From Setoptus koraiensis (taxonomy: Eukaryota > Animalia > Arthropoda), in the NCBI GenBank assembly GCA_048013815.1, contig CM106586.1:19902001-19966000 (forward strand): a DNA stretch of 64,000 nucleotides, in the 5' to 3' direction. The translations under genes and the position numbers were made by a program. The notes below the pieces were generated by a model. The model searched no databases, was not told where the DNA came from, and was given only the letters and a program-made list of their open reading frames with translations. Below are positions 1-56,700 of the stretch, in pieces. Position 1 is the stretch's first letter. Each line of letters opens with the position of its first letter.

Positions 1-632
1 CCAGCTCGAATTGATGCACGCCGACATGCACGCCGACATGCACGCAGAGAGGCGCTAATCACGGCGGCCCGCTCATTGCAAAATTGTGCCACAGCTCGGC
101 TACAGCGGCCGCGGACTATAGCGCCGTTCGCGACTGCGGCGACTATAGCGACTGCGGCGACTATAGCGACCATGGCGACTGCGGCGGCTGTGCCACGGCG
201 ACGTTCGCCACTTTTTTCGTTGACATTGTCGCCGTTTGCCAGCACGCCGACACAATGGCGACCGGCGACATGCGTTACATAATCCAGTGCGCTACTGTCA
301 CCACCACTATTCAATTCGATTCATTCCAGCGAGTCGCATATCATTCACATATTTGGCCCTCATTCATGCCATCGTCGTCTGCTGTTGCTGCCGTTGTTGG
401 CGCTGTTGTTGTTGCCGCTGTTGCCGTTGTTGCCGCTGTTGCCGCCGCTGTTGTTGTTGCTGCTGTTGTTGCTGTTGTTGGCGCTGTTGTTGTCGCGATC
501 ATCATGCACAATTTAACAGTTAATTTATGCGCAGGCTCTCGCAGCGACGAGTCTATTAGTTGACTCGTTTAAACCGCTCCTCTGATTGTCCCTCTGTCGC
601 TGTTGCCAGTGTCGCTGTTGTCGGCATGTCTC

Positions 633-7443: not shown

Positions 7444-8510
7444 CTAGATCCTGTACATGAGCGATGTAACCTGGCTGGCGTGTTGTGAGTTGAGCTGGGC
7501 GCTTCTCTGTTTTCTCCTCTTGTTTACCAGTCCGTCCATCAGCGAGTCCATTTGTGCGGCTTGGGGCGCTGGTGTTGTGCTGGTTGTCGATGTCATTTTG
7601 TTGTAGTGTCTCTCTGCCAACTCTAGCAGCCTGTCAGTGTCTGTGCCATCGTCGATGTCATTTGATTTGTTGTTGTTGCTGTTGTCGGTGGTGGTGGTGG
7701 TTGCGTCACTGTCGGCTATGCTGTTGTTGTCGTTGTCGGTGTCGTCGTCGTCGCCCTCTTGGCCGCTCATTTCAGTCAGATCTGGCACCAACAAAGTGCC
7801 ACTGGCCTGCTCTTGGCTCTCTGTTGTGCCGGAAGTTGTTGCTGTCGTGCCCACTTGTTGTTGTGAAGGAAGCTGCGTTTGGTGCAATGCACTTTGCACC
7901 AGATCCATTTCGGCGGTGTTGTTGTTGTTGTTGTCGGTGTTGCTGTTGGTGTCGGTGTTTGTCGACTGGAGAGTGTCGTCGATGGTGTCAAACGTGAGCA
8001 ATTCCGTTTGAATGGTGTCAGTTTGGGTGCCGTTGATATTGTTTGTGGCGATGACAATCATGGGCAGCGACGACTGGTTGCCGCTGCTCAGCTTGAGCCC
8101 AATAGACTCCAATTCCGTCTGATTGACCGTCTTGTTGTTCGTGAAGCGAATCTTGTCGTAGTAGCTCCATTCCTGCGATAACAATGGTGACAATTAATTT
8201 TTGAATAAGTTAGTTAATTGATCGATTAGTTAATTGATCGATTAGTTGATTGATCGAGTCAATTGATCGAGTCGATCGGTCGACTCGATCGATCGAGTTC
8301 ACGCGTGAATGTCATACTTACATCACCGCACTTCCGGCAGATGCACTGGATCCAGGCGAAGTGGCCGCAGTAGCCGAGGCCGCAGCTCTGCTGGTTGCAG
8401 TATTGCTGACAGGAGCCGTTGTCGAAGGGGCAGCCCTGGTCGGCTAGCATGAGGCCCAATTGGCTGATTACTACGGCGACAAACAATGCGATAACGGTAA
8501 ATTTAGACAT
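7444..8510 (-). CDS. Secreted CS-alpha-beta defensin domain (8 Cys) with a long acidic low-complexity C-terminal extension
   Basis: Exon 1 8510-8322 (63 aa): signal peptide plus GCPFDNGSCQQYCNQQSCGLGYCGHFAWIQCICRKCGD, ending at a GTAAGT donor. Intron 8173-8321 (149 nt). Exon 2 8172-7444 starts after TATCGCAG in phase 0 (EWSYYDK...); about 305 aa total. Confidence 0.85.
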
Positions 8511-18720: not shown

Positions 18721-18882
18721 TCAACTTGACTCGGCATCGTTGAACCCGATCGACACACACACACAAACAGAAATGTTACGTAACTTGTGAGCTGTCGTAC
18801 ACCCAAGGATGACCACCACTTGTTGCCAGTTGTCGTGCTTGCCGCTAGCGACACATGCAGCTCGCACGCCGCCGTTGTTGCC

Positions 18883-18913
<31 letters not shown>

Positions 18914-19227
18914 CCGTTGTTGTTGTTGTTGCCGTTGTTGTTGTCGTTGCTGTTGTTGTCAGATGGGCTCGTTGTTGGCGCCACCTCGAACCACTTCTCA
19001 CCCACAAGCTCACAATCAGTTAGCTGGCCGGACCGGCCAAGCGGCCAGCTAAGTGATTGTGGCCGGCGTTTGTTGGCCTGCCGTTCATAGCTCACGTCGT
19101 GGGCGTGAGGAACACTCCTGTGGCGCACTCCTGAAGAAGAATTCTTTTTTGTCAAGCTAGCCGGCGCAGCAGTGTCGCAGTGATACGACAAGTGTCTCAC
19201 CTGTGCAGCCATTGGCAGTTTGGTCAT
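18721..19227 (-). CDS. Candidate coding exon of an unidentified gene (MTKLPMAAQ..., Asn-rich)
   Basis: True ATG (CAACATGA), 168 open codons with mixed composition before the poly-N tract. No family motif recognised. Confidence 0.3.
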
Positions 19228-20672
19228 GTTGCTCTTGTTTGCTCACACATACATACTGCGGTGTCCTCACATTTGAGAACCGCTTGCCACTTGCAAACAA
19301 TCTTGACGTCGTTCGTTCAAAAGTTTCTCAGCCAGCGAACCTTTGAATAAATAATCTGCTTAAATCGAGCCAGCCAGCCAGCCAGCCAGCCAGCCAGTGA
19401 GCCAGCCAGAACTAATCGGATAGTGTGCCCCATTGAGCGACATTGAGTCACATCGACGATATACATCCGACCGACAGTCGCAAAGAGTGGCCAGCAAATA
19501 GAATCAAATCCGCAGTGGTAACTAATAGGCCAGACAACGTCACGATCACAGCACAACACAAACAAATTTTCTTGTCTATCCACTGTTGAAGCGGCCAGTT
19601 TTGTTACGTAATTGAGCGCCGACAACAACGTCACGTTTTCCGTTACCACTGGCGTCGCAGCAACAAGTGCATCATCAGCAGCGACAGCACCGACAACAAC
19701 GACACCGACAACAACGACACCGACAACAACGACAACGACAACGACAAAGTTTTTCATTGTTGTCATTGCGCCAAAAGCGTTATCGGCGTCGCTCCAGTTT
19801 ATTCAAGTTTATCGTTCGCGCATCTTGTTTATCGAACACACACACACACACTGACCTTGGTTTGTGACAGAAGTAGCAACAGGTGAACAGGTAGCACCGA
19901 GACAGGTGCGGAGGGGTTCGCAGCGGAGAAAAGTGACCAACAGCGACTGCACACAGCATTGCCGATCCACACATGAATATCGGCAGCAGCAACAGCAACA
20001 ACAGACGGCGACACAGGTGAATCAAATGGAAATATTAGTTGTGTGTATGTAGTTAGTTACATGAGCTGCGCCGAGATGAAACTACAAACAATATTATTTA
20101 CAATTTATTAGTATCATACTAGCAATAAAACGGCAACTGAACAGAGCGGCAGCAGCAACGGAATAAAACGGATGATTGAGTGAGCTAAGAGTGAGCACAT
20201 CCGGAACTCGATCAGTGTTGTTTATTTGGCAATAGCAGCGACAATTGTCGACAATCAATTCACAAACTGGCCACCGGCAGACACTGGCTGACATCGTCAT
20301 TTGTGTAGCCATTGTCTTTGCGTCTTGGCCGAGACTTACCGTCACCAGAAACAGCAACAACATCATCAACAACAACATCATCAGCAACAACAACAACAAC
20401 TACAACGGCAACGACAGCAACAACGACAACAGCAACAACGACAACAACGACAGCAACAACGACAACAACGACAGCAACAGCAACAGCAACAAAGAGATAA
20501 TCGGGCTCTAGTGACAACAAGGTCAACGACAGCGTCCGACGACAACAGGCTGTCATTGTGTGCCGTTGGTGTATCACTCACTTAACCAACACAGACGCCA
20601 GACACATTACGTCAGATTGAGCAGCAATTGGCCATAGACAATCAATCATTATGTAATGAACGCTCTGCTGAC

Positions 20673-26818: not shown

Positions 26819-26905
26819 TTGTCGCCCGGCCCAACCGACTGGCCCAATCGACTGGCAAGTGACACAACAACAAGATCTCACAACAACAACAGCAACACCA
26901 CCACC

Positions 26906-26937
<32 letters not shown>

Positions 26938-27407
26938 CAACAAACGACAGCAACAGCGACAGCAGCAGCGCACTGTTGCAACCGGAAGCGCACCCACAGT
27001 CCGTGGCAATAGATGGACTAGATTCGAAAGACAAAGTCAGCTGTTCGCATCGGTTGCCGGGGCCCCCGAACAGTTTGCCGGCGCAGTTTTAGTTTGCGCA
27101 CTGGGGCCGACTCATGTAGACATACTGTACATACAAACAAAACGTAATTGCGCAATTTCGCGCACAATTTCCACGACCATTCCCAGATCACAGATCTTTC
27201 AATAAACGATCATCAGCAACTACCGATAAACTTGCGTGTCCCTTGCAGTGTCGCTAGCGTGTCTCTCGCAGTGTCTCGGGGGCTCAGCGTCGCCTCATCC
27301 GCGGCTTGGCTCGCCCCTCGACATCGATCTGCCGGCTTGGGCGACTTTGAGAAAATTTCTTCGAAAAGTTTCGGCGCCCGGCCAACGGACGCCGAAACTC
27401 TCAATCG

Positions 27408-27491: not shown

Positions 27492-29195
27492 GCGCCCTTG
27501 TCGGGCCGCGACGGGCCAGAGGCTTCGCGAAGGCCGAGCGGCCGTCCGGAGCGAGCTTGTGCGCCGTTTATGGTGGCCAATCGTTTGTTGCGAGACGCTA
27601 AATTGAGGAAGTGTCCTATTGGCGATATTTTGCCAGTTATTGCCGATCAACTGGCTTCTTTTTGTCCGCTTTTGCCGGGTAGGTGCGTGTGCTTTTTTCC
27701 AGCGCTGCAGCTACCTGTTGCTGGCTGCATTCCCAGCCAGCAACGGCACACCAACGGCACACCAACGGCAGCACCATTAGGCTCTGGAGCGCCCGTTCGA
27801 GTCGAAAGTATTGGCCAACTGTCACAGACGCCGGACCAATTATCGATCGGTTAATTAATCATGAGCGAACAGTTAATTAACGGCACAATCGGCAGCAAGT
27901 GGCGCAACGAAACGCCGGCACCGAGTGAGAGTAACCTGTTTGAGTTGCGATTTGACCACGCACCAGTGATCGCGACAACGGCGACGCCAGTGATACCTGC
28001 TGCAATTGGCGGCTCAAGTGGCAGCCTGGCCGCTGCAGTGTCGCAAGGAAAGAAGCCATTATATAATAATAACTCGAACTCGAGACGACACAGGTACATG
28101 TAGAGCTTGTGTTGTTGTTGGTTGCTGCAAACAAACGACAAGTTTTTCATTGTTTGTTTGGCGTGATGGTTACATTTGTTTGGCTCGTTGTGTTGCGAAC
28201 GTTGCCTTGCCAGGCGACAACAGCTTGTGATGTGAGCCCGCCTAAGCGATATTGCTAGTTGCTTCCTATTCTGACTGCCTATTCTATTAGCCGGGCGATG
28301 GCTGCAATCTCAGCTCATGGCACTTTGGAATAGATCGGTCGATGGTAATTCCAACTGCCAGCTAATGACTGTTGGCCAGCCAATGTTGACATATTATATA
28401 ATATTATGATATAACAACGGCAGCCGTTTCCCCTCGGTGATGAACCGCCGGCAGATGATACCGCTACTGGTGCCAGCTGTACGGGTGTGCGATAGTTGCA
28501 GCACTTTGGACAGCGCTTTTGACAGCAATATGACAGCCAAGTGACAGCCAAGTGACAGTTGCTCCATTGGCCAATGCTGGATATACTAATATCTCGCCGA
28601 TGGTTGCCAGTGCGACAACGGCCGCTTTGCATAACGTCGCCGCTTCAGTCGCTTGAGCATTGCGCAACAACGCTTAAAGGGATATTTATATCTTGCGAGC
28701 GCCGCTTGCCAACGCATATAAATATATGTGAGCAGCCAGACACTTTCACACACCGACCGGCACCATCGACACCAACGACAACAGCGACAGCAGCGACGAC
28801 AACGACGACAACGACAACAACGACGACAACGACAACAACGACGACAACGACAACAACATTAGCGACAACTTTCTTCTGTAGCAAAGTGACGCGCGCCACC
28901 GACTCAAGCGACAACCGTTATAATGTTCGCAGTTGCGCCTAAACTGTCGGCTACAAATTGTCATTTGCATTTGTTTGTCGTGTCGTGACCACTCATTTGC
29001 GAACACTTCAGTCGCCTCACAACTGTGCGCCAGACCACACACAAGTTCGACACAAGCAAACAAATATCAAGCACACAACATACAATAGATTAGATAATCC
29101 ACTCGAGCCAACAAACCCAATCACTAGCATCATTTAGACTCGAATCATTTCCAGATTTCATTCAAAGTTTCGCGACACTCAATCAAGCCAGCAAC

Positions 29196-36773: not shown

Positions 36774-37609
36774 TTAATGATGTGGAGATTGCGTAATATC
36801 CGGCTGCATTTTTAATGAATTGATTATTGCACCCGTGATCTATTTGATTGTGAGAAGGGCGAAATAGAAAGAGAGTTATAGTCTTAATTATACTTCCATA
36901 ATCTCTTGTTGAGCGGTATGTTATAATCATTGAACTCAGACTGCTCTCAGATTTCGATCATCATCTACATATCATCTAATATACTTACAAGAAGAACGTC
37001 TGAATACAAACACGTGGAAGCTTTGTCGTGGATATCATTTATAGCCACCTGGGCCAAGTCTCGATTCCCTCTTTGAATACAATTATATAGACAATGTGTT
37101 AGCTCGACTAGAAATTTAGACGACAAAGGCACTCCGACGAGGATTCTTGAGCATAATTTGCAAATGTAAATAATGTACTGACTAGGTATCCTGCTCATAT
37201 GCTGCGAATAAATAGCAAGTATACGTCGTAAAATATTCATTTTGTTTTTTGCACAAATCGTCTCAACTGGATCATGGCTTTCTAAATTATAAATAACTAG
37301 TAATAATTGATCAACCATGTCGTCTCTATTGATGAGACTAACGCTAACAAGAGAAGGAACAAAAATCATTGTGAATGTATGTAGTTGTTCGTCGTTAGAC
37401 CTAGCGAGTTTGAGTAGATGCTTGCATAGTGTAGACATCTTTTGAGATTCTAATTTTGACTCCATAACAATATCCAATAGTTTGTCCAAAGTCCACCCCC
37501 TAAAAACCAATGGTAGATTATCAATTAGCTTTTCCAAATCCAGTGGATTCGTGGGCTGGTGTGCTATTTCGGGTGGAAGGGTTTTCAGATTTGGATTTGA
37601 AGTGGCCAT
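36774..37609 (-). CDS. FAM126: Hyccin / FAM126 (PI4KA complex subunit), compact form (about 228 aa)
   Basis: Motifs LLLVIYNLE, LCSRI, DLAQVAINDI...LYSDVLL|ITGAIINSL. Exons 37609-36989 and 36839-36774 (phase 0). Confidence 0.8.
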
Positions 37610-37720
37610 GCCTGTTAGGTGATAACTGTTTTAGTTCTTTGAATATATTATTAAAGTTAAATAAATAATGATTACTACTCTATCAATGTTCCTATGAAGC
37701 CTAAGTTTTACTCATGAGTA
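37556..37720 (-). repeat. Copy A of an inverted duplication (upstream sequence plus first 18 codons), hyccin side
   Basis: ATGGCCACTTCAAATCCA is identical to 40032-40049. Similarity continues to codon 18 and, with indels, roughly 60-110 nt upstream; the outer boundary is approximate. Confidence 0.8.
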
Positions 37721-38006
37721 AGCATTAATTGTATAAATGGACTGTTCCTTATGTAACAACATGTTTTACAGTGCCAAGTGAACATCGATATGATGAGAAA
37801 TTTATCAAAACATCTGACAGCGCTTCGGATGCATGAGTGATATCGTGTTCAGGTATTTTGTTTTTGTTCTGCGCAAATCATAGGGCGTAGCAATAATTTT
37901 AAACTTTCCCCATCAATCTTTCCGTATGTAATAATGGTGTGAATAATATATCCCCTTTTGGTTAATCAGCAATTTAATTATTGGTTTCAAAAAAGTAGTA
38001 ACAATT

Positions 38007-38978
38007 ATGATGAATTTGGGCGGTGACACTGGCGGTACGTGTAGCGTCGACCAGAAAGTATCAGTGCATGACGAAAAAGAAGTTCACCTGTCGAAATTTG
38101 AGTTCATTAGGATCTTGGAAGCATCGGTCAATCATAAAATGATCACGTTTGAGGCCCTATACAAAGGCCAAAAGGCCGTTATCAGATTGGAGAAGACAAT
38201 ACTAGATGAGCAGTCGATTTATGAGTTGCTCAAGGATCAGGGATGTGTTATAGAGAGAGATTTTCACAATGACATATATGGTAATTATTTCTCTTTTCCG
38301 TCTGGATTAGCCAAAAGTTTAACTAGCATAAAAACTACCCTCATACATCCTGCCACAGAAGCCGTCATCATCAAATATACCAAACACGAGCGTTCTCTCA
38401 TCAATGAAACTAGCGAGGATTATTACAAATTTGTAGAAGATCATATACTAAAGCGAATTGGCCCAGAAAAAGAGTCAATTCGTTGGATATATCAGATTTT
38501 AGAGCACAAATCAGAACAAGAAAGGGTTATTTTTGATTTGCAAGACGAGGAGAATGGTTTCATGATGCTGCCAGATCTTAAGTGGGGAGGAACCATTGAT
38601 GATCTCTACATGTTAGCCATCTGTTACAGACGTGATATCAAATCTTTGAGAGATCTAAATGGTCGACATCTGACGCTACTAAACAATATTCTATCCAAAG
38701 GCACGGAAGTTATTTGCTCCAAATATAATATAAGGAAAGGAAATCTCAGGGTATACATTCATTACCTCCCATCATTCTACCATTTCCATGTGCATTTCAA
38801 GAATGTCGGTGGCTCTAGCCAATCAGAAAGCTCTGATCGCGACAATCTACTAGTGACCGTTATAAACAATATTATGTTACGTGACGACTACTACCAGAAG
38901 GCGACACTGACCTTCCCATTGTCGCATCTAGACCCTCTATTCGAAATTTACCAAAACCGAGACAGAAGCGACAAATGA
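38007..38978 (+). CDS. DCPS: m7GpppX diphosphatase (scavenger decapping enzyme)
   Basis: Intronless; LPDLKW, IKSLRDL, and HIT motif HYLPSFYHFHVHF. Confidence 0.95.
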   Translation: MMNLGGDTGGTCSVDQKVSVHDEKEVHLSKFEFIRILEASVNHKMITFEALYKGQKAVIRLEKTILDEQSIYELLKDQGCVIERDFHNDIYGNYFSFPSGLAKSLTSIKTTLIHPATEAVIIKYTKHERSLINETSEDYYKFVEDHILKRIGPEKESIRWIYQILEHKSEQERVIFDLQDEENGFMMLPDLKWGGTIDDLYMLAICYRRDIKSLRDLNGRHLTLLNNILSKGTEVICSKYNIRKGNLRVYIHYLPSFYHFHVHFKNVGGSSQSESSDRDNLLVTVINNIMLRDDYYQKATLTFPLSHLDPLFEIYQNRDRSDK

Positions 38979-39939
38979 CTGACTTGCCCATTCAGCTCAT
39001 CTAGTGATAGACGCCACTTTCCTTGCGAGTTTCCGTAATGCAAGTGAACAACTCTCATTGAGCCTGTCTTTACAATGCTCGCATACTCAACTCAGTGGGT
39101 GTTCATTTTCTATTTGGTTTCTAGCTGGTGACATAGACAAAACAGGCAACTCAACTGTCGCTTTCACGGATAAATTACGTGGTACGAGATTTAGCGTATT
39201 CATTGGGGCACAAGACAATACTCTACACCGTCCGCCCGCCCCCGTAATTTGTTTATGGCAGCGACTGTAACTGTCAATCAGGTGAGAGTCTACTCTTCTC
39301 ATCGCATAATAAAGACGATTGAGGAAAGTTCAAAAACTAATTGCCACTATCCGAGGATTGCGCAGAAACAACAAATCACCTGATGTGTCCTTCTCAATTA
39401 TTTTCAGTGTGTATTTTTCTTCATCATCCCCTGTTTGTTGTCCACTTGAAGAGCTTGGCAACGAGAAACGTGTTCTTGCACCTCGTTACTACTCAAGGGT
39501 TTATTTTCAAAACAGGGTATCGCCTACTGCGTGATTATTCACCTCCGTCACCGCCGGCCAGTTTGCGGAGTAACGGCGCGCGGCTCACGCCTTTTTCTCG
39601 CCTAGTTTTCCCTTTGAGCTCGCCACAAAAAGGACCGGATATTTTGATTTTAGCACAAGATAATGTTACTTTTCTAGATTTTTTCCGTCGTCGATGTGTT
39701 CTCTCGCGATGGAACCTCTCAGTGAGTTGAGTTTTTCGTTCGCCATTTAACGTCTGAAAGGGGGCGTGAACCGCACAGTTCGTCGGAACTAGAAACGAAG
39801 CAGGTGAATTGGATCACCCTGCTGATACCCAATACCCTGTTTTTGAAAATCAGACTCATGGAGAAAAATAAAACAAATTGATCAACCACCCTACGGATAA
39901 TCTGTCTTACTCGTCTTACAGCAACATTATTCAGGAGTC

Positions 39940-40085
39940 ATGGTAATGAACTAAACTCTGGCTTACCAACAACTGATATTTGATTTTAAATAAATTCAAG
40001 GATCTATACATACAACTATTACTAAATCAACATGGCCACTTCAAATCCAATCTTGAAGAACTTCCCACCGGAGATCACATATCAA
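39940..40085 (+). repeat. Copy B of the inverted duplication, MPDU1 side
   Basis: See 37556-37720; the upstream boundary is approximate. Confidence 0.8.
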
Positions 40086-40808
40086 ACCATGGATGTCTGT
40101 AAGAAGTTGTACGAAACTAAATGCTGTCACGATCTTATTCACCACTTGAATATTGCAGATGATTGCATGAAAGTCTTTGGTGCTAAAACACTGGGCTACG
40201 GTATCATAGTTGGAGCCTCAGCAGTCAAATTGCCTCAAGTATGGAAAATATTCTCCACAAAGAGTGGGGCAGGCATCACTGTACTTGGTGTCATACTTGA
40301 GTTACTGGCTATTACATTCAATGCCTCGTACAGCTTTAGGAAAGACTTTCCTTTCTCGGCTTGGGGAGAGGCCATATTCCTAGCTATTGAGACTGGCATG
40401 ATAGCCTTCTTAGTTTTGTTCTACAGTGGCAAAAAGCTACAATCGTTTGTGTTCTCTCTCATCTATGGAATTATTATTTATTCATTACTATTCCTGGTGT
40501 CTGTGGAGACACTCTGGTGGCTTCAGTCTACTGTTTTACCAATGTCTATCATAGGAAAAAGTATACAAGTCGTTAAGAATTACCAAGCAGGCCACACTGG
40601 ACAAATATCTGCAGTGACAGCTTGGAGCATTTTAATCGGATCATTGGCAAGAGTTTTCACAACCATCCAAGAAACTGGTGACATGTTAACTGCTGTTACG
40701 TTTGCTTGCTCTTCAGCAGCGAATGCCGTGATCGCACTTCAAATTGTCTACTATTGGAAGGCAACCACGAAGCATATTGAGATGGCCAAGAAGAAGAAGA
40801 AAAATTAG
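40032..40808 (+). CDS. MPDU1: Mannose-P-dolichol utilization defect 1 protein (PQ-loop)
   Basis: KTLGYGIIVGASAVKLPQV, FSAWGE, NYQAGHTGQISAVT, RVFTTIQETGD; C-terminal KKKKKN. Confidence 0.93.
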   Translation: MATSNPILKNFPPEITYQTMDVCKKLYETKCCHDLIHHLNIADDCMKVFGAKTLGYGIIVGASAVKLPQVWKIFSTKSGAGITVLGVILELLAITFNASYSFRKDFPFSAWGEAIFLAIETGMIAFLVLFYSGKKLQSFVFSLIYGIIIYSLLFLVSVETLWWLQSTVLPMSIIGKSIQVVKNYQAGHTGQISAVTAWSILIGSLARVFTTIQETGDMLTAVTFACSSAANAVIALQIVYYWKATTKHIEMAKKKKKN

Positions 40809-40886
40809 ATTGTTTTAATTAACACTTTTAACACTGGCATATTACTTAGACTTGTTATATGTATAGATATAGTGAGCCAGATCATT

Positions 40887-41576
40887 TCAGATTATATAGA
40901 ATAGTCGCAATGTTCCAAGAATAATAAGAACCAAGATGAGAAAAAGAATAACATAGATAACCGTCCAAAATTTCATAGTGTTCTTGTGTGTTACAATAGT
41001 TTCCTTAATATTATCGCCACCAATATCGATGTTGATCAGAGCTGATTGCATGGAACTGAAAACACTGGCCACGGTTCTCCTTGTATCCTCAATATTAGAG
41101 GCTACGATCGATAGGAGCTTCTCATTCTCGCTCATGGATATTTGTAATCTTTTCAACGCTTCGATATCTATGTTGTTTGGCGGATTATTGCCGGTATTAG
41201 GTCTATGAGTTTCGTTAGAGGGAGAGTAAACCTCATCAACATTTTTTACAAACGAATAGGTTTTTGTGATTCCCGGCAAGTAATTTTGCTGCCATTCGTA
41301 CATAAAATATTGTAACTGTTGAGTGGCGATTTCATTATAGAGAGTATCAACGTCGTGTTTCTGCATGGACGATTGTATGCGTCCTATTAGTCGGATGATT
41401 TGATTACTAGTTTCACATATATCATCAATATTGCGACTAAATGAAAAGTCAGGCTCATCTTGAGCAAGTCTCATACTTTTTGCTCTTATCTTGTGGACTC
41501 TCAAGCAGCTATCCAAGGCATTGAATCTACTTTTAACTTGCTGACACAAATCTATGAGTTCGCTTAATTCACTCAT
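40887..41576 (-). CDS. Divergent syntaxin-like tail-anchored SNARE
   Basis: Intronless 229 aa: helical N-domain, linker, heptad region, basic residue then a C-terminal transmembrane segment. Confidence 0.65.
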   Translation of the reverse strand: MSELSELIDLCQQVKSRFNALDSCLRVHKIRAKSMRLAQDEPDFSFSRNIDDICETSNQIIRLIGRIQSSMQKHDVDTLYNEIATQQLQYFMYEWQQNYLPGITKTYSFVKNVDEVYSPSNETHRPNTGNNPPNNIDIEALKRLQISMSENEKLLSIVASNIEDTRRTVASVFSSMQSALINIDIGGDNIKETIVTHKNTMKFWTVIYVILFLILVLIILGTLRLFYII

Positions 41577-44682: not shown

Positions 44683-45178
44683 TCAAAGGCGTCTAAAGCG
44701 CTTTACTGAAAATCCGCAAGATCGACGCTAGTCAGCCTTGCATGAGTAGCGCGAGCCAACGGCAGTCAACGCTGGGCCCGCAGTGCACTGCGTAGCCACG
44801 AACACGCAAACATGCAATGCGCCTCCAGAAATCACTTACGCCCAACTGCTTCAATGAACGCAATCAAGAAAAAAGAAACACTTATCGAAACAGTCCAGGC
44901 GTGGGCATGCATTTCTCCAGCGTTGCGCGCGCCCCTGGCGGCGCACATCCATAAATCGAAATGGAGGCTGTAAAAGAGCCTCACATAGTGCGCACGATCG
45001 GACAGAGGCCTGGCACAAAACAGACCAAATCAGGCACGCACATATGATTTTCAGCTTTATGCGTACAAACAGAACTTGCACAGAAATGTGCCGAGAACTG
45101 AGATTACACCCTGTAAATAATGCGTTGCGGTACTCACTCTTCCACCTGGTTAGGCATGTGTGATCCTTGTGATAACAT
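44683..45178 (-). CDS. Candidate 77-aa single-pass membrane microprotein (3 exons)
   Basis: Exons 45178-45138, 45009-44840 and 44705-44683; introns of 128 and 134 nt with GTGAGT/GTAAGT donors and consistent phases. Ends ...TVSISVSFFLIAFIEAVGLKRFRRL. Confidence 0.35.
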
Positions 45179-53730: not shown

Positions 53731-56700
53731 TAGCAAACCACTACATCATCATCATGACGGCTCAGTTGGGCTAACTGTCAAACAACGGCAACAACGGCGC
53801 CAATATCAGCAGCGCCGCCAGTGGGAAAAGAATCAGATTTCTTCCACTTGTGGCTTCATATTATTTTTCACGGTCGCATGATAATGATGAGTGCACAAGT
53901 CGGGCATTAATGATGCATTGTTGTCGGTTGGCTCGGCCAGCGAGCCGAGTCTTTAATGACTCAAGCGAGCCGGATTTCATTTCATCGCGATGCTTGGTAT
54001 CATATCAATGATATCATACATACCGGTACATACTTATATGAGGGCAACGCGATGGCGGCAATTGTCGCCAAGTGACCGTCGCCTAGTGCCCGCCGACGAT
54101 GTGGCAACGTGCTGATTCTGTCCAGCTAACGGGCAGCATTATTGTCCATTATCAAGTCATGAGCCATAACACAATGCCAGTTAATTAGCTTGTTGGCCGG
54201 CGCATGGATAATCAGTGTGAGAGAGGCAAGCCAATGACACTTTTGGCGACGACACAACCGGCAGCGATTGTTGGCCTCGTCGACGTGCCCATGTATGACT
54301 TGATTATTATTGTTGGATTGAAGTGTTGGATCATCAATCACCGGCCACACTGACTGATTTGAGACTCGAGGTGACTTGTTAGTTTGTAAGGGTTGCTGGG
54401 GTGACGGGCAGTCACTAGAGAGGGCGCCAGTTGTACATGGTGTGCAATGGTTTAATGGTTTAATGGTGGCAAAACAACAGATATAAACAATCCGCTGGAA
54501 ACGTAAAACGAGCCTCGCCACTCAAAGCGAGTGTTTGTCAAAGCAACAACGTCAATTATGGCGATATAAGCCAGCCAGCCAGCCAGCCGGCTCACAACAG
54601 ATTGCGACTGTCGAGTAATTTGAGTTCATTCGCAATCAAGTCGCAGCAATGAAGCAATCAAATCAGCTTAGGTGCATGCCAAGCCAGCCTGCATTGTTGT
54701 GAGCTGTGAGAATGTGTGAAATTTTGAACAAACAACAACAACAACAACAACTACTCACTCGTCTGTAATGACGCCATAGTATGGTAACACAACAACAAAC
54801 ATTTGATGCCAACAACACCGAGATCTTAGCGACTATATGTGATATAAACTAATGATGAGGTCATATCGCCGCTCGTGTTTACATTGGCAAATGCAGCGCC
54901 AAGTGCTAGATAAGGTGCCTAGGTGCATGGCGCCCTCTTGTTGCACAGCCGTCAAATATATCCGTTTGTTGTCATGTACATGAATGATTAATGCTCTCAC
55001 CATTGCTCTATTCCGTCATATTACTATCATCTATCTGTTTTTGTTGTGACACAATTGCTCCAATTGGGACATGTGAGTGTTGTCTAAAACCGCTTATCTG
55101 CGACGACGACGACGATGATGATGACGGAACAAAGTACTCTCTTCACTTCAACTCAAGTCTAGGTGATGCCCGGCCCGTTCTACTGGGCGCATGTGACTGC
55201 TTAACAGAGGCAGCTGCTCCGTGAAGCCTTTAAGTTTGTTGTTTACGTATTTTCACGTTGACTAGACAATATTTGTTTTTAATTTTAATTTTGTCTTTTC
55301 GTTTGGTGTTTGTTTTTGCTCTGGCTGTGGCTTTAGCCAAAATGGTGGGCCTACCAATTTGTTAGCTCATTGCGAGCTAATGCGCAAATAAATAGTTCAC
55401 GTCGCATGTGAAAGAGGGCGCAGGACGGGCTCAAACAGGGCAACTAATGAGACACGACCGCTGAAACTAAATCCATAAGGATCTCGCCGTGAGCCAAGCC
55501 GAAACTGAAGCAAGCCCAACTGAAACTGAAGCAAGCCGAGCATCATTCAGTATTTGTGCCTGAGCTATAATGTTGTGTTTTAATGTTACACATGACATTA
55601 GTGTTGGTTGTTGGTGGCTGCAATATAAAAGGCATAATTGCTGGCATGACTTGGAGCGTTGGCGAGCCGAAAAAGAGTGTGTGTGTAATTGAATGAGAGC
55701 GTGCCTTTTGGTCGCACTGCAAACAGATAAATAAAACACAACAAGCGAGCGAGCTGAGCCAGAGAAAGGGAGCATCAGATTAAGACAGAGAGGAGCGCCT
55801 ATGGCAGATGTTGGCGTGTTGGATTGACAGTGTCGGTGGGTAGTAGTAGTAGTAAATTAAAGTCGACACACACACACACACAAGATACACAAACAAAAAT
55901 GATGATGGAATAGAGGAAGCAAAGAGGAAGCGTTGCGTCGCCGAGCTTACCAACACAACGCATATTGCATCGATGTCTAGGCGGCGAACCTACGACGATG
56001 ATAATAATAATGTGTGTGCTGTTTGATTAGGGATATAGACTAGCGAACAACTGCGATTGCGACAGTAACAGCGACAGTAACAGCGGCGGCTCGGCGAATT
56101 CGAATTTTCGTTCGGTGTCTAGGCGTAGTAGTCCCATACGTCATGCGTTATCGGCTTGACTCAAGCCGCTTGAGTGCGAGTGCGAGTGTGAGTGTGTGCG
56201 TTCGACGGATGCGACGATAAACGAGTGGCATTACCACCAGCAACGTAGTCGTCTTCGCGGTCTTGGTCGTCAATATAATTATTAGCAATATTCGGCAACA
56301 ACAGCAACAGCAGCGCCAGCGACAATCACCAGCAACCACGACGACGACGACAACAGCAGCGCCGCCAACAACAACGTCGTCAGCAACTACTGCTGCTAGC
56401 ACACTTTTGATGGCCATATATGGATAGTGGAGCTGCAAGTGATCTGTTGCATACTTGTACGCCCACGTTGCGCTTCGCGCAATGGCTTCTTGCGGCTGTT
56501 GCTCGCTGGGCGCGCTTATCTCGGCCCGAGATTCTCAGGCGAACCACAACAACGTTCGCGTTCGCCAGCGCAAGCTTGCCAAGCTTGCCAAGCTTGCGGC
56601 CCAACAGGCAGCAGCAGCGAGCTTGCGGCCAGAGATGCAAAGAGGCAAATAGGCAACGAGCAACAGCATGCGTTGGTGCGACTGTGCGCAACATAGTGGG

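What the first reader, a model, noticed from the sequence alone, without database searches (positions are those of the whole stretch)
37556..40085. Two unrelated genes share a duplicated N-terminal leader (MATSNPxLKxxPPEIxxQ)
Hyccin starts MATSNPNLKTLPPEIAHQ and MPDU1 starts MATSNPILKNFPPEITYQ, with 13 of 18 residues identical. The first 18 nt are identical; six later codons differ only synonymously and five change the amino acid, which suggests selection on the peptide. Similarity extends upstream through AT-rich sequence with a probable 5'-UTR intron donor (CATGA|GTAAAA versus CATG|GTAATG). MPDU1 has a second ATG right after the leader (MDVCKK). One gene seems to have captured the other's 5' end, or both carry a mobile leader cassette acting as a shared targeting, degradation (an F-box-like LPPEI is noticeable) or translational-control tag. 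The direction of transfer is unresolved.
Basis: partly seen in the sequence, partly recalled or inferred. Interest (0 to 1): 0.78.

Follow-up and report, generated by a model that had tools for sequence, protein, structure and literature searches.

The report
Hyccin gene wearing MPDU1's front end
In this mite, the hyccin gene starts with an inverted copy of the upstream DNA, start codon and first 21 codons of the MPDU1 gene 2.4 kb away; this is a clear but fairly ordinary case of one gene borrowing a neighbour's 5' end, and the borrowed peptide seems to be a passenger, not a shared tag.

Summary
The 18-mer at the start codon occurs exactly twice in the window: at the hyccin start (37592-37609, minus strand) and the MPDU1 start (40032-40049, plus strand). 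The two peptides match at 13 of 18 residues, and the DNA similarity runs about 95-105 nt further upstream.

The direction of transfer is now resolved. About 45 mite MPDU1 orthologues begin with the same motif (M-[AS]-N-P-[LI]-L-K/Q-x-F/L-P..E-V/I). None of 70 other hyccins does. So hyccin is the recipient.

A sister species carries the same chimera with three shared derived changes, so there was one capture before the two species split. Since then the leader has had 0 amino-acid and 7 silent changes in MPDU1. In hyccin it has had about 11 amino-acid and 4 silent changes, which looks near neutral. AlphaFold2 predicts residues 1-18 as disordered.

cDNA-like contigs, which splice out the hyccin intron, run unbroken from each ATG to -96 and -81. 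This argues against the proposed 5'-UTR intron and suggests the copied module carries the transcription start region.

No F-box and no third copy were found. Other notes from this scan report at least six similar 5'-end borrowings between neighbouring genes elsewhere in this genome; I did not check them. My verdict is a new member of a known kind (chimeric gene by partial duplication), of moderate interest.

The parts
37547..37609 (-). Hyccin codons 1-21: the copy of the MPDU1 leader, now the start codon and N-terminal tail of hyccin
   Evidence: The 18-mer is identical to the MPDU1 start. There are 17/63 nt differences from window MPDU1 and 11/63 from sister MPDU1. Residues 1-18 have pLDDT below 50.
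37610..37720 (-). Copied promoter-proximal DNA and 5' UTR of hyccin, including the decayed box at 37697-37718
   Evidence: Four-way alignment A2 and local alignment z-scores. A cDNA-like contig spans 37480-37705 collinear with the genome. The nearest in-frame stop is 24 nt upstream of the ATG, with no other in-frame ATG between.
36989..37546 (-). Rest of hyccin exon 1 (codons 22-207): the native hyccin fold
   Evidence: Pfam Hyccin, E 3.6e-25. The AlphaFold2 model has mean pLDDT 88 and matches 5dse_B at Z 22, rmsd 2.4, 172 residues aligned. dN/dS is 0.12 against the sister.
36840..36988 (-). Hyccin intron (149 nt, GT..AG on the minus strand)
   Evidence: A contig joint in run X4 skips exactly 36840-36988. 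The sequence was read.
36774..36839 (-). Hyccin exon 2 (21 codons plus stop)
   Evidence: Translation ITGAIINSLKMQPDITQSPHH*. It continues the canonical ..LLVTNAIxNSL.. end of the hyccin domain seen in A6.
38007..38978 (+). DcpS gene lying between the two copies; not part of the duplication
   Evidence: Pfam DcpS and DcpS_C. The DcpS-then-MPDU1 tandem is kept in three distant mites.
39930..40031 (+). Donor: MPDU1 promoter-proximal DNA and 5' UTR, with the box at 39937-39958
   Evidence: Box search. A cDNA-like contig spans 39951-40900 collinear with the genome. It aligns with sister MPDU1 throughout.
40032..40094 (+). Donor: MPDU1 codons 1-21, the ancestral MPDU1 N-terminus
   Evidence: About 45 mite orthologues share the motif. 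There are 0 replacement and 7 silent differences from the sister.
40095..40808 (+). Rest of MPDU1 (PQ-loop membrane protein, ends in KKKKKN)
   Evidence: Pfam PQ-loop and 120 named or unnamed MPDU1 relatives.

Best explanation
A DNA segment of about 170-200 bp was copied in inverted orientation to a site 2.4 kb away, on the far side of DcpS. The segment is the MPDU1 transcription start region, its 5' UTR of about 85-95 nt, the ATG and the first 21 codons. The copy fused in frame to hyccin and became that gene's 5' end. This happened once, shortly before the window species and its sampled sister species split.

The copy now supplies hyccin's transcription start region, leader and start codon. 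The 21-residue peptide it brings is a disordered N-terminal tail that drifts almost neutrally. In MPDU1 the same peptide is an old, strongly constrained part of the protein.

Shown: the homology, its direction, its age relative to the species split, the difference in constraint, and that both leaders sit in spliced, collinear transcripts.

Inferred: that the copy acts as hyccin's promoter, that translation starts at the copied ATG, that the copy took the place of hyccin's own first ~20 codons (helix 1), and that the event was tied to hyccin moving next to DcpS/MPDU1.
For: Homology.

Direction: MPDU1 orthologues at 53-64% identity start M[AS]NP[LI]L.. (N at 31 of 49 and P at 34 of 49 of the aligned positions). 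None of the other 70 hyccins from an exhaustive search has that start; canonical hyccins begin M..V/I..EWL.E.K.L.

Single old event: the sister contig L001 has the same gene order and the same chimera. Three derived changes, I7N, F11L and Y17H, are shared by both hyccin copies.

Constraint: between the species, hyccin codons 1-21 have dN 0.186 and dN/dS 0.54, against 0.047 and 0.12 for codons 24-208. The MPDU1 leader has dN 0 and dS 0.95. Polarised counts are 11 replacements: 4 silent against 0: 7, Fisher p = 0.004, and the hyccin ratio does not differ from neutral (p = 0.76).

Structure: residues 1-18 have pLDDT below 50 and the first helix starts at residue 22, right after the homology ends.

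Transcripts: runs X4 and X5 cover exons only and splice out the hyccin intron. Their contigs include both ATGs plus 96 and 81 nt upstream. They end at aligned positions (37705 and 39951), just 3' of the shared box.

Start codon: there is an in-frame stop upstream, and no other in-frame ATG before the conserved residues 24-48.

Relocation: hyccin is not next to DcpS/MPDU1 in four other mite contigs, while the DcpS-MPDU1 tandem is kept in three.
Against: Contig ends cannot prove a transcription start, and the runs are not on record as RNA; their cDNA nature is inferred from the spliced joint and the exon-only coverage. No ribosome or protein data show which ATG is used.

With only 21 codons, weak selection on the hyccin tail cannot be excluded. 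The core L-K-x-L-P-P-E-I-x-H-Q is unchanged in both hyccin copies.

What the copy replaced is unclear. hhalign only aligns from residue 46, and the structural alignment is ambiguous at the N-terminus. A group of compact mite hyccins lacks the first three helices altogether.

A second, unaltered hyccin copy elsewhere in the genome could not be looked for.

The window lineage carries 14 of the 18 post-split changes in the two leaders (p = 0.03), although MPDU1 protein rates are equal (8 against 10). This remains unexplained.
Confidence: 0.72

Rival explanations
1. The leader is a functional tag shared by both proteins (targeting, degradation or translational control) and is kept by selection in both.
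For: 13 of 18 residues are identical, and the core LK.LPPEI.HQ is intact in both hyccin copies. A tiny 4-codon upstream ORF lies in the shared box of MPDU1 in both species and of the window hyccin.
Against: All replacements lie on the hyccin branches, and the hyccin leader's dN is four times that of the rest of hyccin. The leader is predicted disordered. There is no F-box or any other Pfam match. From general knowledge of 7-helix PQ-loop proteins with a cytosolic C-terminal KKxx signal, the MPDU1 N-terminus should face the ER lumen, whereas hyccin is cytosolic, so a common targeting role is unlikely (inference). The upstream ORF is lost in the sister hyccin, where its first ATG has become GTG.
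Confidence: 0.1
2. The two 5' modules exchange sequence repeatedly by gene conversion (concerted evolution), not through one old copy event.
For: The sister's two leaders differ at only 7/63 nt, against 17/63 in the window. The sister hyccin box is much closer to MPDU1's box than the window hyccin box is. Another note of this scan claims repeated overwriting for eEF2/RpS24 in the same genome (unchecked).
Against: Three derived changes are shared by both hyccin copies across the tract. Parsimony places the excess differences on the window branches, and at 5 of the 6 silent sites specific to window MPDU1 the window hyccin agrees with both sister copies. Within-species paralogues are never closer than between-species orthologues (7 against 7 in the sister, 17 against 7 and 12 in the window).
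Confidence: 0.1
3. The chimera arose through RNA: reverse transcriptase switched template from hyccin mRNA to the 5' part of MPDU1 mRNA, and the product inserted as a retrogene.
For: The homology begins close to where the transcript contigs begin.
Against: Hyccin keeps a spliced 149-nt intron. The box lies upstream of the contig ends. Insertion 2.4 kb from the donor gene itself would be a coincidence. No poly(A) tract or target-site duplication was seen.
Confidence: 0.04
4. The resemblance is chance, convergence or an assembly artefact.
For: The sequence is AT-rich and the peptide is short. Vertebrate hyccins have a loosely similar FKTLPE motif near their N-terminus.
Against: The 18-nt exact match plus flanking homology has an expectation of 0.04. 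Independent contigs from four runs in three studies span each copy with unique flanks. A second species has the same arrangement.
Confidence: 0.02

Closest known systems
Chimeric genes made by DNA-level partial duplication of neighbouring genes (for example Sdic in Drosophila melanogaster; the 'partial' and 'chimeric' duplicate classes reviewed in PMC3449122)
   Same: The 5' regulatory DNA and first codons of one gene are fused in frame to the body of another. The donor and recipient are close neighbours, and the donor stays intact. Direction was worked out by comparing each partner with its own orthologues, as that review recommends.
   Different: The textbook cases create an extra, new gene. 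Here the recipient looks like the lineage's ordinary hyccin orthologue, whose own front end was replaced or preceded. Only 21 codons were transferred, and they behave as a passenger. Whether an untouched hyccin copy exists elsewhere was not testable.
Other 5'-end borrowings noted by this scan in the same mite genome (IleRS/MRPL14, COQ2/MRPS23, Tid1/mRpL4, RTRAF/NIP45, eEF2/RpS24, OGDH/DEAD-box helicase)
   Same: A neighbouring gene's upstream DNA, start codon and N-terminal codons are copied, often inverted, onto another conserved gene. A related species keeps the fusion.
   Different: Several of those cases transfer mitochondrial-type leaders that could be functional. Here the transferred peptide has no evident role in the recipient. 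Those notes are unchecked AI notes that I could not test, because they lie in other windows.
Inverted duplications at rearrangement breakpoints
   Same: Short inverted duplicates of gene ends lie at sites where gene order changed. Here hyccin is next to DcpS/MPDU1 only in this lineage.
   Different: A single inversion with staggered breaks does not reproduce the present layout without also flipping DcpS, yet the DcpS-then-MPDU1 tandem is ancestral. A short templated inverted insertion during break repair fits better, but it is not shown.

Membership tests
Chimeric gene by partial duplication (5' donor plus 3' recipient) | DNA-level homology between the recipient's 5' end and the donor's 5' end, beyond chance | tested here: met
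   an 18/18 exact core; 71-77% identity over 93-101 nt; z 5.0-5.7 for the upstream part alone in three of the four hyccin/MPDU1 pairs (z 3.3 for the window's own pair).
Chimeric gene by partial duplication (5' donor plus 3' recipient) | The shared segment is ancestral in the donor family and absent from the recipient family | tested here: met
   About 45 mite MPDU1 orthologues carry the motif. None of the other 70 hyccins does.
Chimeric gene by partial duplication (5' donor plus 3' recipient) | In-frame fusion kept as an open frame in more than one species | tested here: met
   The window and the sister contig L001 both keep the ATG and the frame.
Chimeric gene by partial duplication (5' donor plus 3' recipient) | The chimeric transcript exists | tested here: met
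   Spliced, exon-only contigs of runs X4 and X5 span the copied ATG and 96 nt upstream. Caveat: these are contigs, not reads, and the runs are not labelled as RNA.
Chimeric gene by partial duplication (5' donor plus 3' recipient) | An unaltered parental copy of the recipient persists (as in 'new gene' chimeras) | not testable with these tools
   Only this 64 kb window of the genome can be read. No second close hyccin appeared in the protein searches.
F-box proteins | An F-box domain of about 45 residues recognisable by profile | tested here: not met
   No Pfam family at E <= 10 for the first 60 residues of either protein. Only five residues (LPPEI) resemble the start of the motif.
Mobile or multi-copy leader cassette | Three or more copies attached to unrelated genes | tested here: not met
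   There are two copies in the window and two in L001, by DNA pattern and by peptide tblastn. The whole genome was not searchable.
Retrogene chimera by template switching | Intronless recipient part with retro-insertion hallmarks | tested here: not met
   Hyccin has a spliced 149-nt intron. No poly(A) tract was seen.
Concerted evolution of paralogous 5' modules | Paralogues within a species are closer than orthologues between species | tested here: not met
   Window paralogues differ at 17/63 nt against orthologues at 7 and 12. Sister paralogues differ at 7 against 7. Three hyccin-specific changes are shared.
Hyccin / FAM126 (PF09790) | Profile match and the hyccin helical fold | tested here: met
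   Pfam E 3.6e-25; PDB FAM126A E 1.4e-15; model against 5dse_B Z 22.0, rmsd 2.4, 172 residues aligned.
MPDU1 (PQ-loop, PF04193) | Two PQ-loop repeats and orthology to named MPDU1 proteins | tested here: met
   Pfam E 3.7e-16. Hits named mannose-P-dolichol utilization defect 1 come from many animals.

The most novel reading that the evidence does not exclude
This is one visible instance of a systematic process in eriophyoid-type mite genomes. Conserved genes whose 5' ends are hit by rearrangement or breakage would be 're-headed' with short, often inverted, copies of a neighbour's promoter, leader and ATG module. In these extremely compact genomes, promoter and N-terminus swapping between unrelated neighbours would then be a regular route of gene survival and of regulatory rewiring.
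Probability: 0.4. Interest if true: 0.75.

Novelty: new member of a known kind. Interest (0 to 1): 0.45.

Why it matters
This is a cleanly polarised, dated example of a conserved housekeeping gene running on a neighbour's copied front end. Hyccin is the scaffold subunit of the PI4KIIIalpha complex.

It carries an internal control that is seldom available: the same 21 codons are under strong purifying selection in the donor and near-neutral drift in the recipient.

It also warns annotators that a shared N-terminal peptide need not be a shared signal.

On its own it is a textbook mechanism. Its value rises if the several similar cases noted elsewhere in this genome hold up. That would point to a recurrent way in which very compact animal genomes repair or rewire gene 5' ends.

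Tried and rejected
- Third copy of the leader. DNA pattern with 3 mismatches and peptide tblastn over the window and loci L001-L004 found only weak chance-level hits, for example NAPPEITY at 44816-44839 (E 0.15) and L001 8570-8614 (E 0.08).
- Remnant of an older hyccin first exon in the hyccin-DcpS spacer. An HMM of canonical N-termini against the three upstream reading frames found nothing.
- RNA runs. None is on record. Expression evidence had to come from two unlabelled runs that behave like cDNA.
- Shared box as a common promoter motif. It occurs only at these genes and is not recognisable upstream of MPDU1 in distant mites.
- Which hyccin helix the leader replaced. hhalign, MAFFT and structural alignment disagree, so this is left open.
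- MITE-like element in the DcpS-MPDU1 spacer as the vehicle. It ends upstream of where the homology starts, so I rejected it.
- Single staggered-break inversion. Rejected because the DcpS-MPDU1 tandem is ancestral.
- Literature. Full-text search found no description of 5'-end swapping in eriophyoid genomes.
- Step left out.
Full report
**What is there**

The window segment 35.9-42.7 kb holds these genes:
- a proteasome subunit (+)
- hyccin (-)
- DcpS (+)
- MPDU1 (+)
- an unnamed tail-anchored-looking gene (-)
- ETF-alpha (-)

Hyccin has two exons, 36989-37609 and 36774-36839. They are separated by a 149-nt GT..AG intron that one public contig splices out exactly. MPDU1 is a single ORF, 40032-40808.

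The two start codons lie 2423 bp apart and face away from each other, with DcpS between them.

**Check of the observation**

The 18-mer at the ATG occurs exactly twice in the window, at the two starts. The chance expectation is 0.04.

Self-blastn of the window recovers the pair at 71% over 101 nt. The window hyccin 5' end matches the sister species' MPDU1 5' end at 77% over 93 nt, E 9e-15.

Upstream of the ATG, local alignment scores beat all 300 shuffles for three of the four hyccin/MPDU1 pairs (z 5.0-5.7); the window's own pair only ties the best shuffle (z 3.3). A 22-nt box about 95-105 nt upstream of the ATG is shared by MPDU1 in both species and by the sister hyccin. It is decayed in the window hyccin.

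Homology stops sharply after codon 21.

Contigs from four runs in three studies cover each copy with its unique flanks, and a second species has the same layout. So this is not an assembly artefact.

**Direction of transfer**

The word-index search returned 120 MPDU1 relatives. About 45 of the mite-like ones, at 53-64% identity, begin M-[AS]-N-P-[LI]-L-[KQ]-x-[FIL]-P-x-[ED]-[VI]. The leader is therefore an old part of MPDU1. Vertebrate MPDU1 proteins still show a related ..LL.P.LLPE.CY.. stretch.

Position 20 is Met only in the window and its sister, so the 'second ATG' is not the ancestral start.

For hyccin, the word search found only the sister orthologue. I therefore ran the exhaustive representative search, because the claim rests on what hyccin relatives lack. 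It returned 71 hyccins. Apart from the sister's, none has this start. Canonical hyccins begin M..(V/I)..EWL.E(F/Y)K.L.

Hyccin is the recipient.

**Age of the event**

The sister contig L001 (MPDU1 92% identical, hyccin 87%, DcpS 81%) has the same gene order and the same chimera. Both hyccin copies share three derived replacements: I7N, F11L and Y17H. That points to one capture before the species split.

Only about 3 changes lie on the stem branches, against 18 after the split, so the capture was not much older than the split.

**How the two copies evolve**

- MPDU1 codons 1-21 between the species: 0 replacements, 7 silent changes (dS 0.95).
- Hyccin codons 1-21: dN 0.186, dN/dS 0.54. Hyccin codons 24-208: dN 0.047, dN/dS 0.12.
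- Parsimony over both species gives 11 replacements : 4 silent on the hyccin branches and 0 : 7 on the MPDU1 branches (Fisher p = 0.004).
- The hyccin ratio does not differ from the neutral expectation (p = 0.76).

One is silent drift under strong constraint in MPDU1. The other is near-free replacement in hyccin.

The AlphaFold2 model of hyccin exon 1 (mean pLDDT 88, pTM 0.84) has residues 1-18 below pLDDT 50 and its first helix at residues 22-30. The rest matches human hyccin in the TTC7B complex (5dse_B, Z 22.0, rmsd 2.4, 172 residues aligned).

**Transcripts**

No run is labelled as RNA. Two runs of one study (X4, X5) nevertheless cover only exons, and one of their contigs removes the hyccin intron, so they behave as cDNA.

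Their contigs run collinear with the genome over 37480-37705 and 39951-40900. The proposed GT donors are also not kept in the sister.

The two contig ends fall within one column of each other in the alignment, just 3' of the shared box. This suggests, but cannot prove, that the transcription start region was copied too.

Upstream of the hyccin ATG there is an in-frame stop at -24 (-69 in the sister). There is no other in-frame ATG before the highly conserved residues 24-48. The copied ATG is therefore the only plausible start.

**Context**

The DcpS-then-MPDU1 tandem is kept in three distant mite contigs, and none of them has hyccin nearby. Hyccins of other mites sit among unrelated genes.

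So hyccin's position here is lineage-specific. Its arrival may be linked to the loss of its own 5' end, but that is an inference.

No remnant of an older first exon is left in the spacer.

It stays open whether the copy replaced hyccin's helix 1 or was simply added in front. The N-terminal length before helix 3 is about the same as in canonical hyccins: residue 46 aligns to profile column 45. However, the conserved Trp of helix 1 has no counterpart in the leader, the alignments disagree, and a group of compact mite hyccins lacks the first helices altogether.

**Ideas that failed**

- F-box: no profile hit.
- Mobile cassette: two copies only.
- Retro-chimera: the intron is present.
- Concerted evolution: hyccin-specific changes are shared, and paralogues are never closer than orthologues.
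- Shared targeting role: also unlikely on topology. From general knowledge of PQ-loop proteins with a C-terminal KKxx signal, the MPDU1 N-terminus should be lumenal, whereas hyccin is cytosolic. This is an inference.

**Unexplained**

14 of the 18 post-split changes in the two leaders fall on the window lineage (p = 0.03), although MPDU1 protein change is symmetric at 8 against 10.

**Relation to what is known**

The mechanism belongs to chimeric gene formation by partial duplication of neighbouring genes (review PMC3449122). I found no paper describing such swaps in eriophyoid genomes.

Other notes of this scan report at least six similar borrowings between neighbours elsewhere in this same genome. 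I could not check them. They raise the possibility that this is a recurrent process, not a one-off.

**Verdict**

The 'capture' reading is right, with the direction MPDU1 to hyccin. The 'shared functional tag', 'cassette', 'F-box' and 'UTR intron' readings are not supported. This is a new member of a known kind, of moderate interest.

Noticed in passing
window 39504-39848: A MITE-like element lies in the DcpS-MPDU1 spacer, with 17-nt terminal inverted repeats (39504-39520 and 39832-39848, 88% complementary). The sister contig has matching ends at L001 8137-8335 but a different interior. The spacer here is about 1.05 kb, against 0.4-0.6 kb in other mites.
   Followed up: partly
window 393-483, 7656-7751, 18882-18960, 19658-19746, 20364-20493, 26884-26949, 28778-28870, 56293-56391: A dispersed family of short repeats (about 60-100 nt, 72-89% identity, both orientations) turned up in the self-blastn of the window.
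   Followed up: no
window 38979-39378: cDNA-like contigs continue 220-400 nt past the DcpS stop codon (X4 38835-39197, X5 103-nt-offset contig 39103-39313). This is either a long DcpS 3' UTR or an unannotated transcript in the spacer.
   Followed up: no
window 39940-39954 and 37701-37715 (-); L001 8874-8888: The shared box holds a 4-codon mini-ORF: ATG GTA ATG AAC TAA in MPDU1, ATG CCG ATG AGC TAA in sister MPDU1, and ATG AGT AAA ACT TAG in window hyccin. It is lost in the sister hyccin. It matters only if transcription starts upstream of it.
   Followed up: partly
window 40054: One X4 contig joins 31 unrelated GC-rich letters to MPDU1 at 40054, inside the leader, with no AG acceptor there. 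It is probably an assembly chimera. The foreign letters are absent from the window.
   Followed up: partly
window 36989-37546 versus L001: Hyccin's silent divergence from the sister (dS 0.40) is about half that of its neighbours MPDU1 (0.79) and DcpS (0.98).
   Followed up: no
window 38007-38978; L002 7439-8854; L003 7315-8841: DcpS is 323 residues here and 322 in the sister, but is called as 471 and 508 residues in two distant mites. Either those carry an N-terminal extension or the ORFs were over-called.
   Followed up: no
window 40887-41576 (-): A 229-residue ORF has no Pfam match and a hydrophobic C-terminal tail (tail-anchored, SNARE-like look). The sister has a called gene in the same position (L001 9804-10391).
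   Followed up: no
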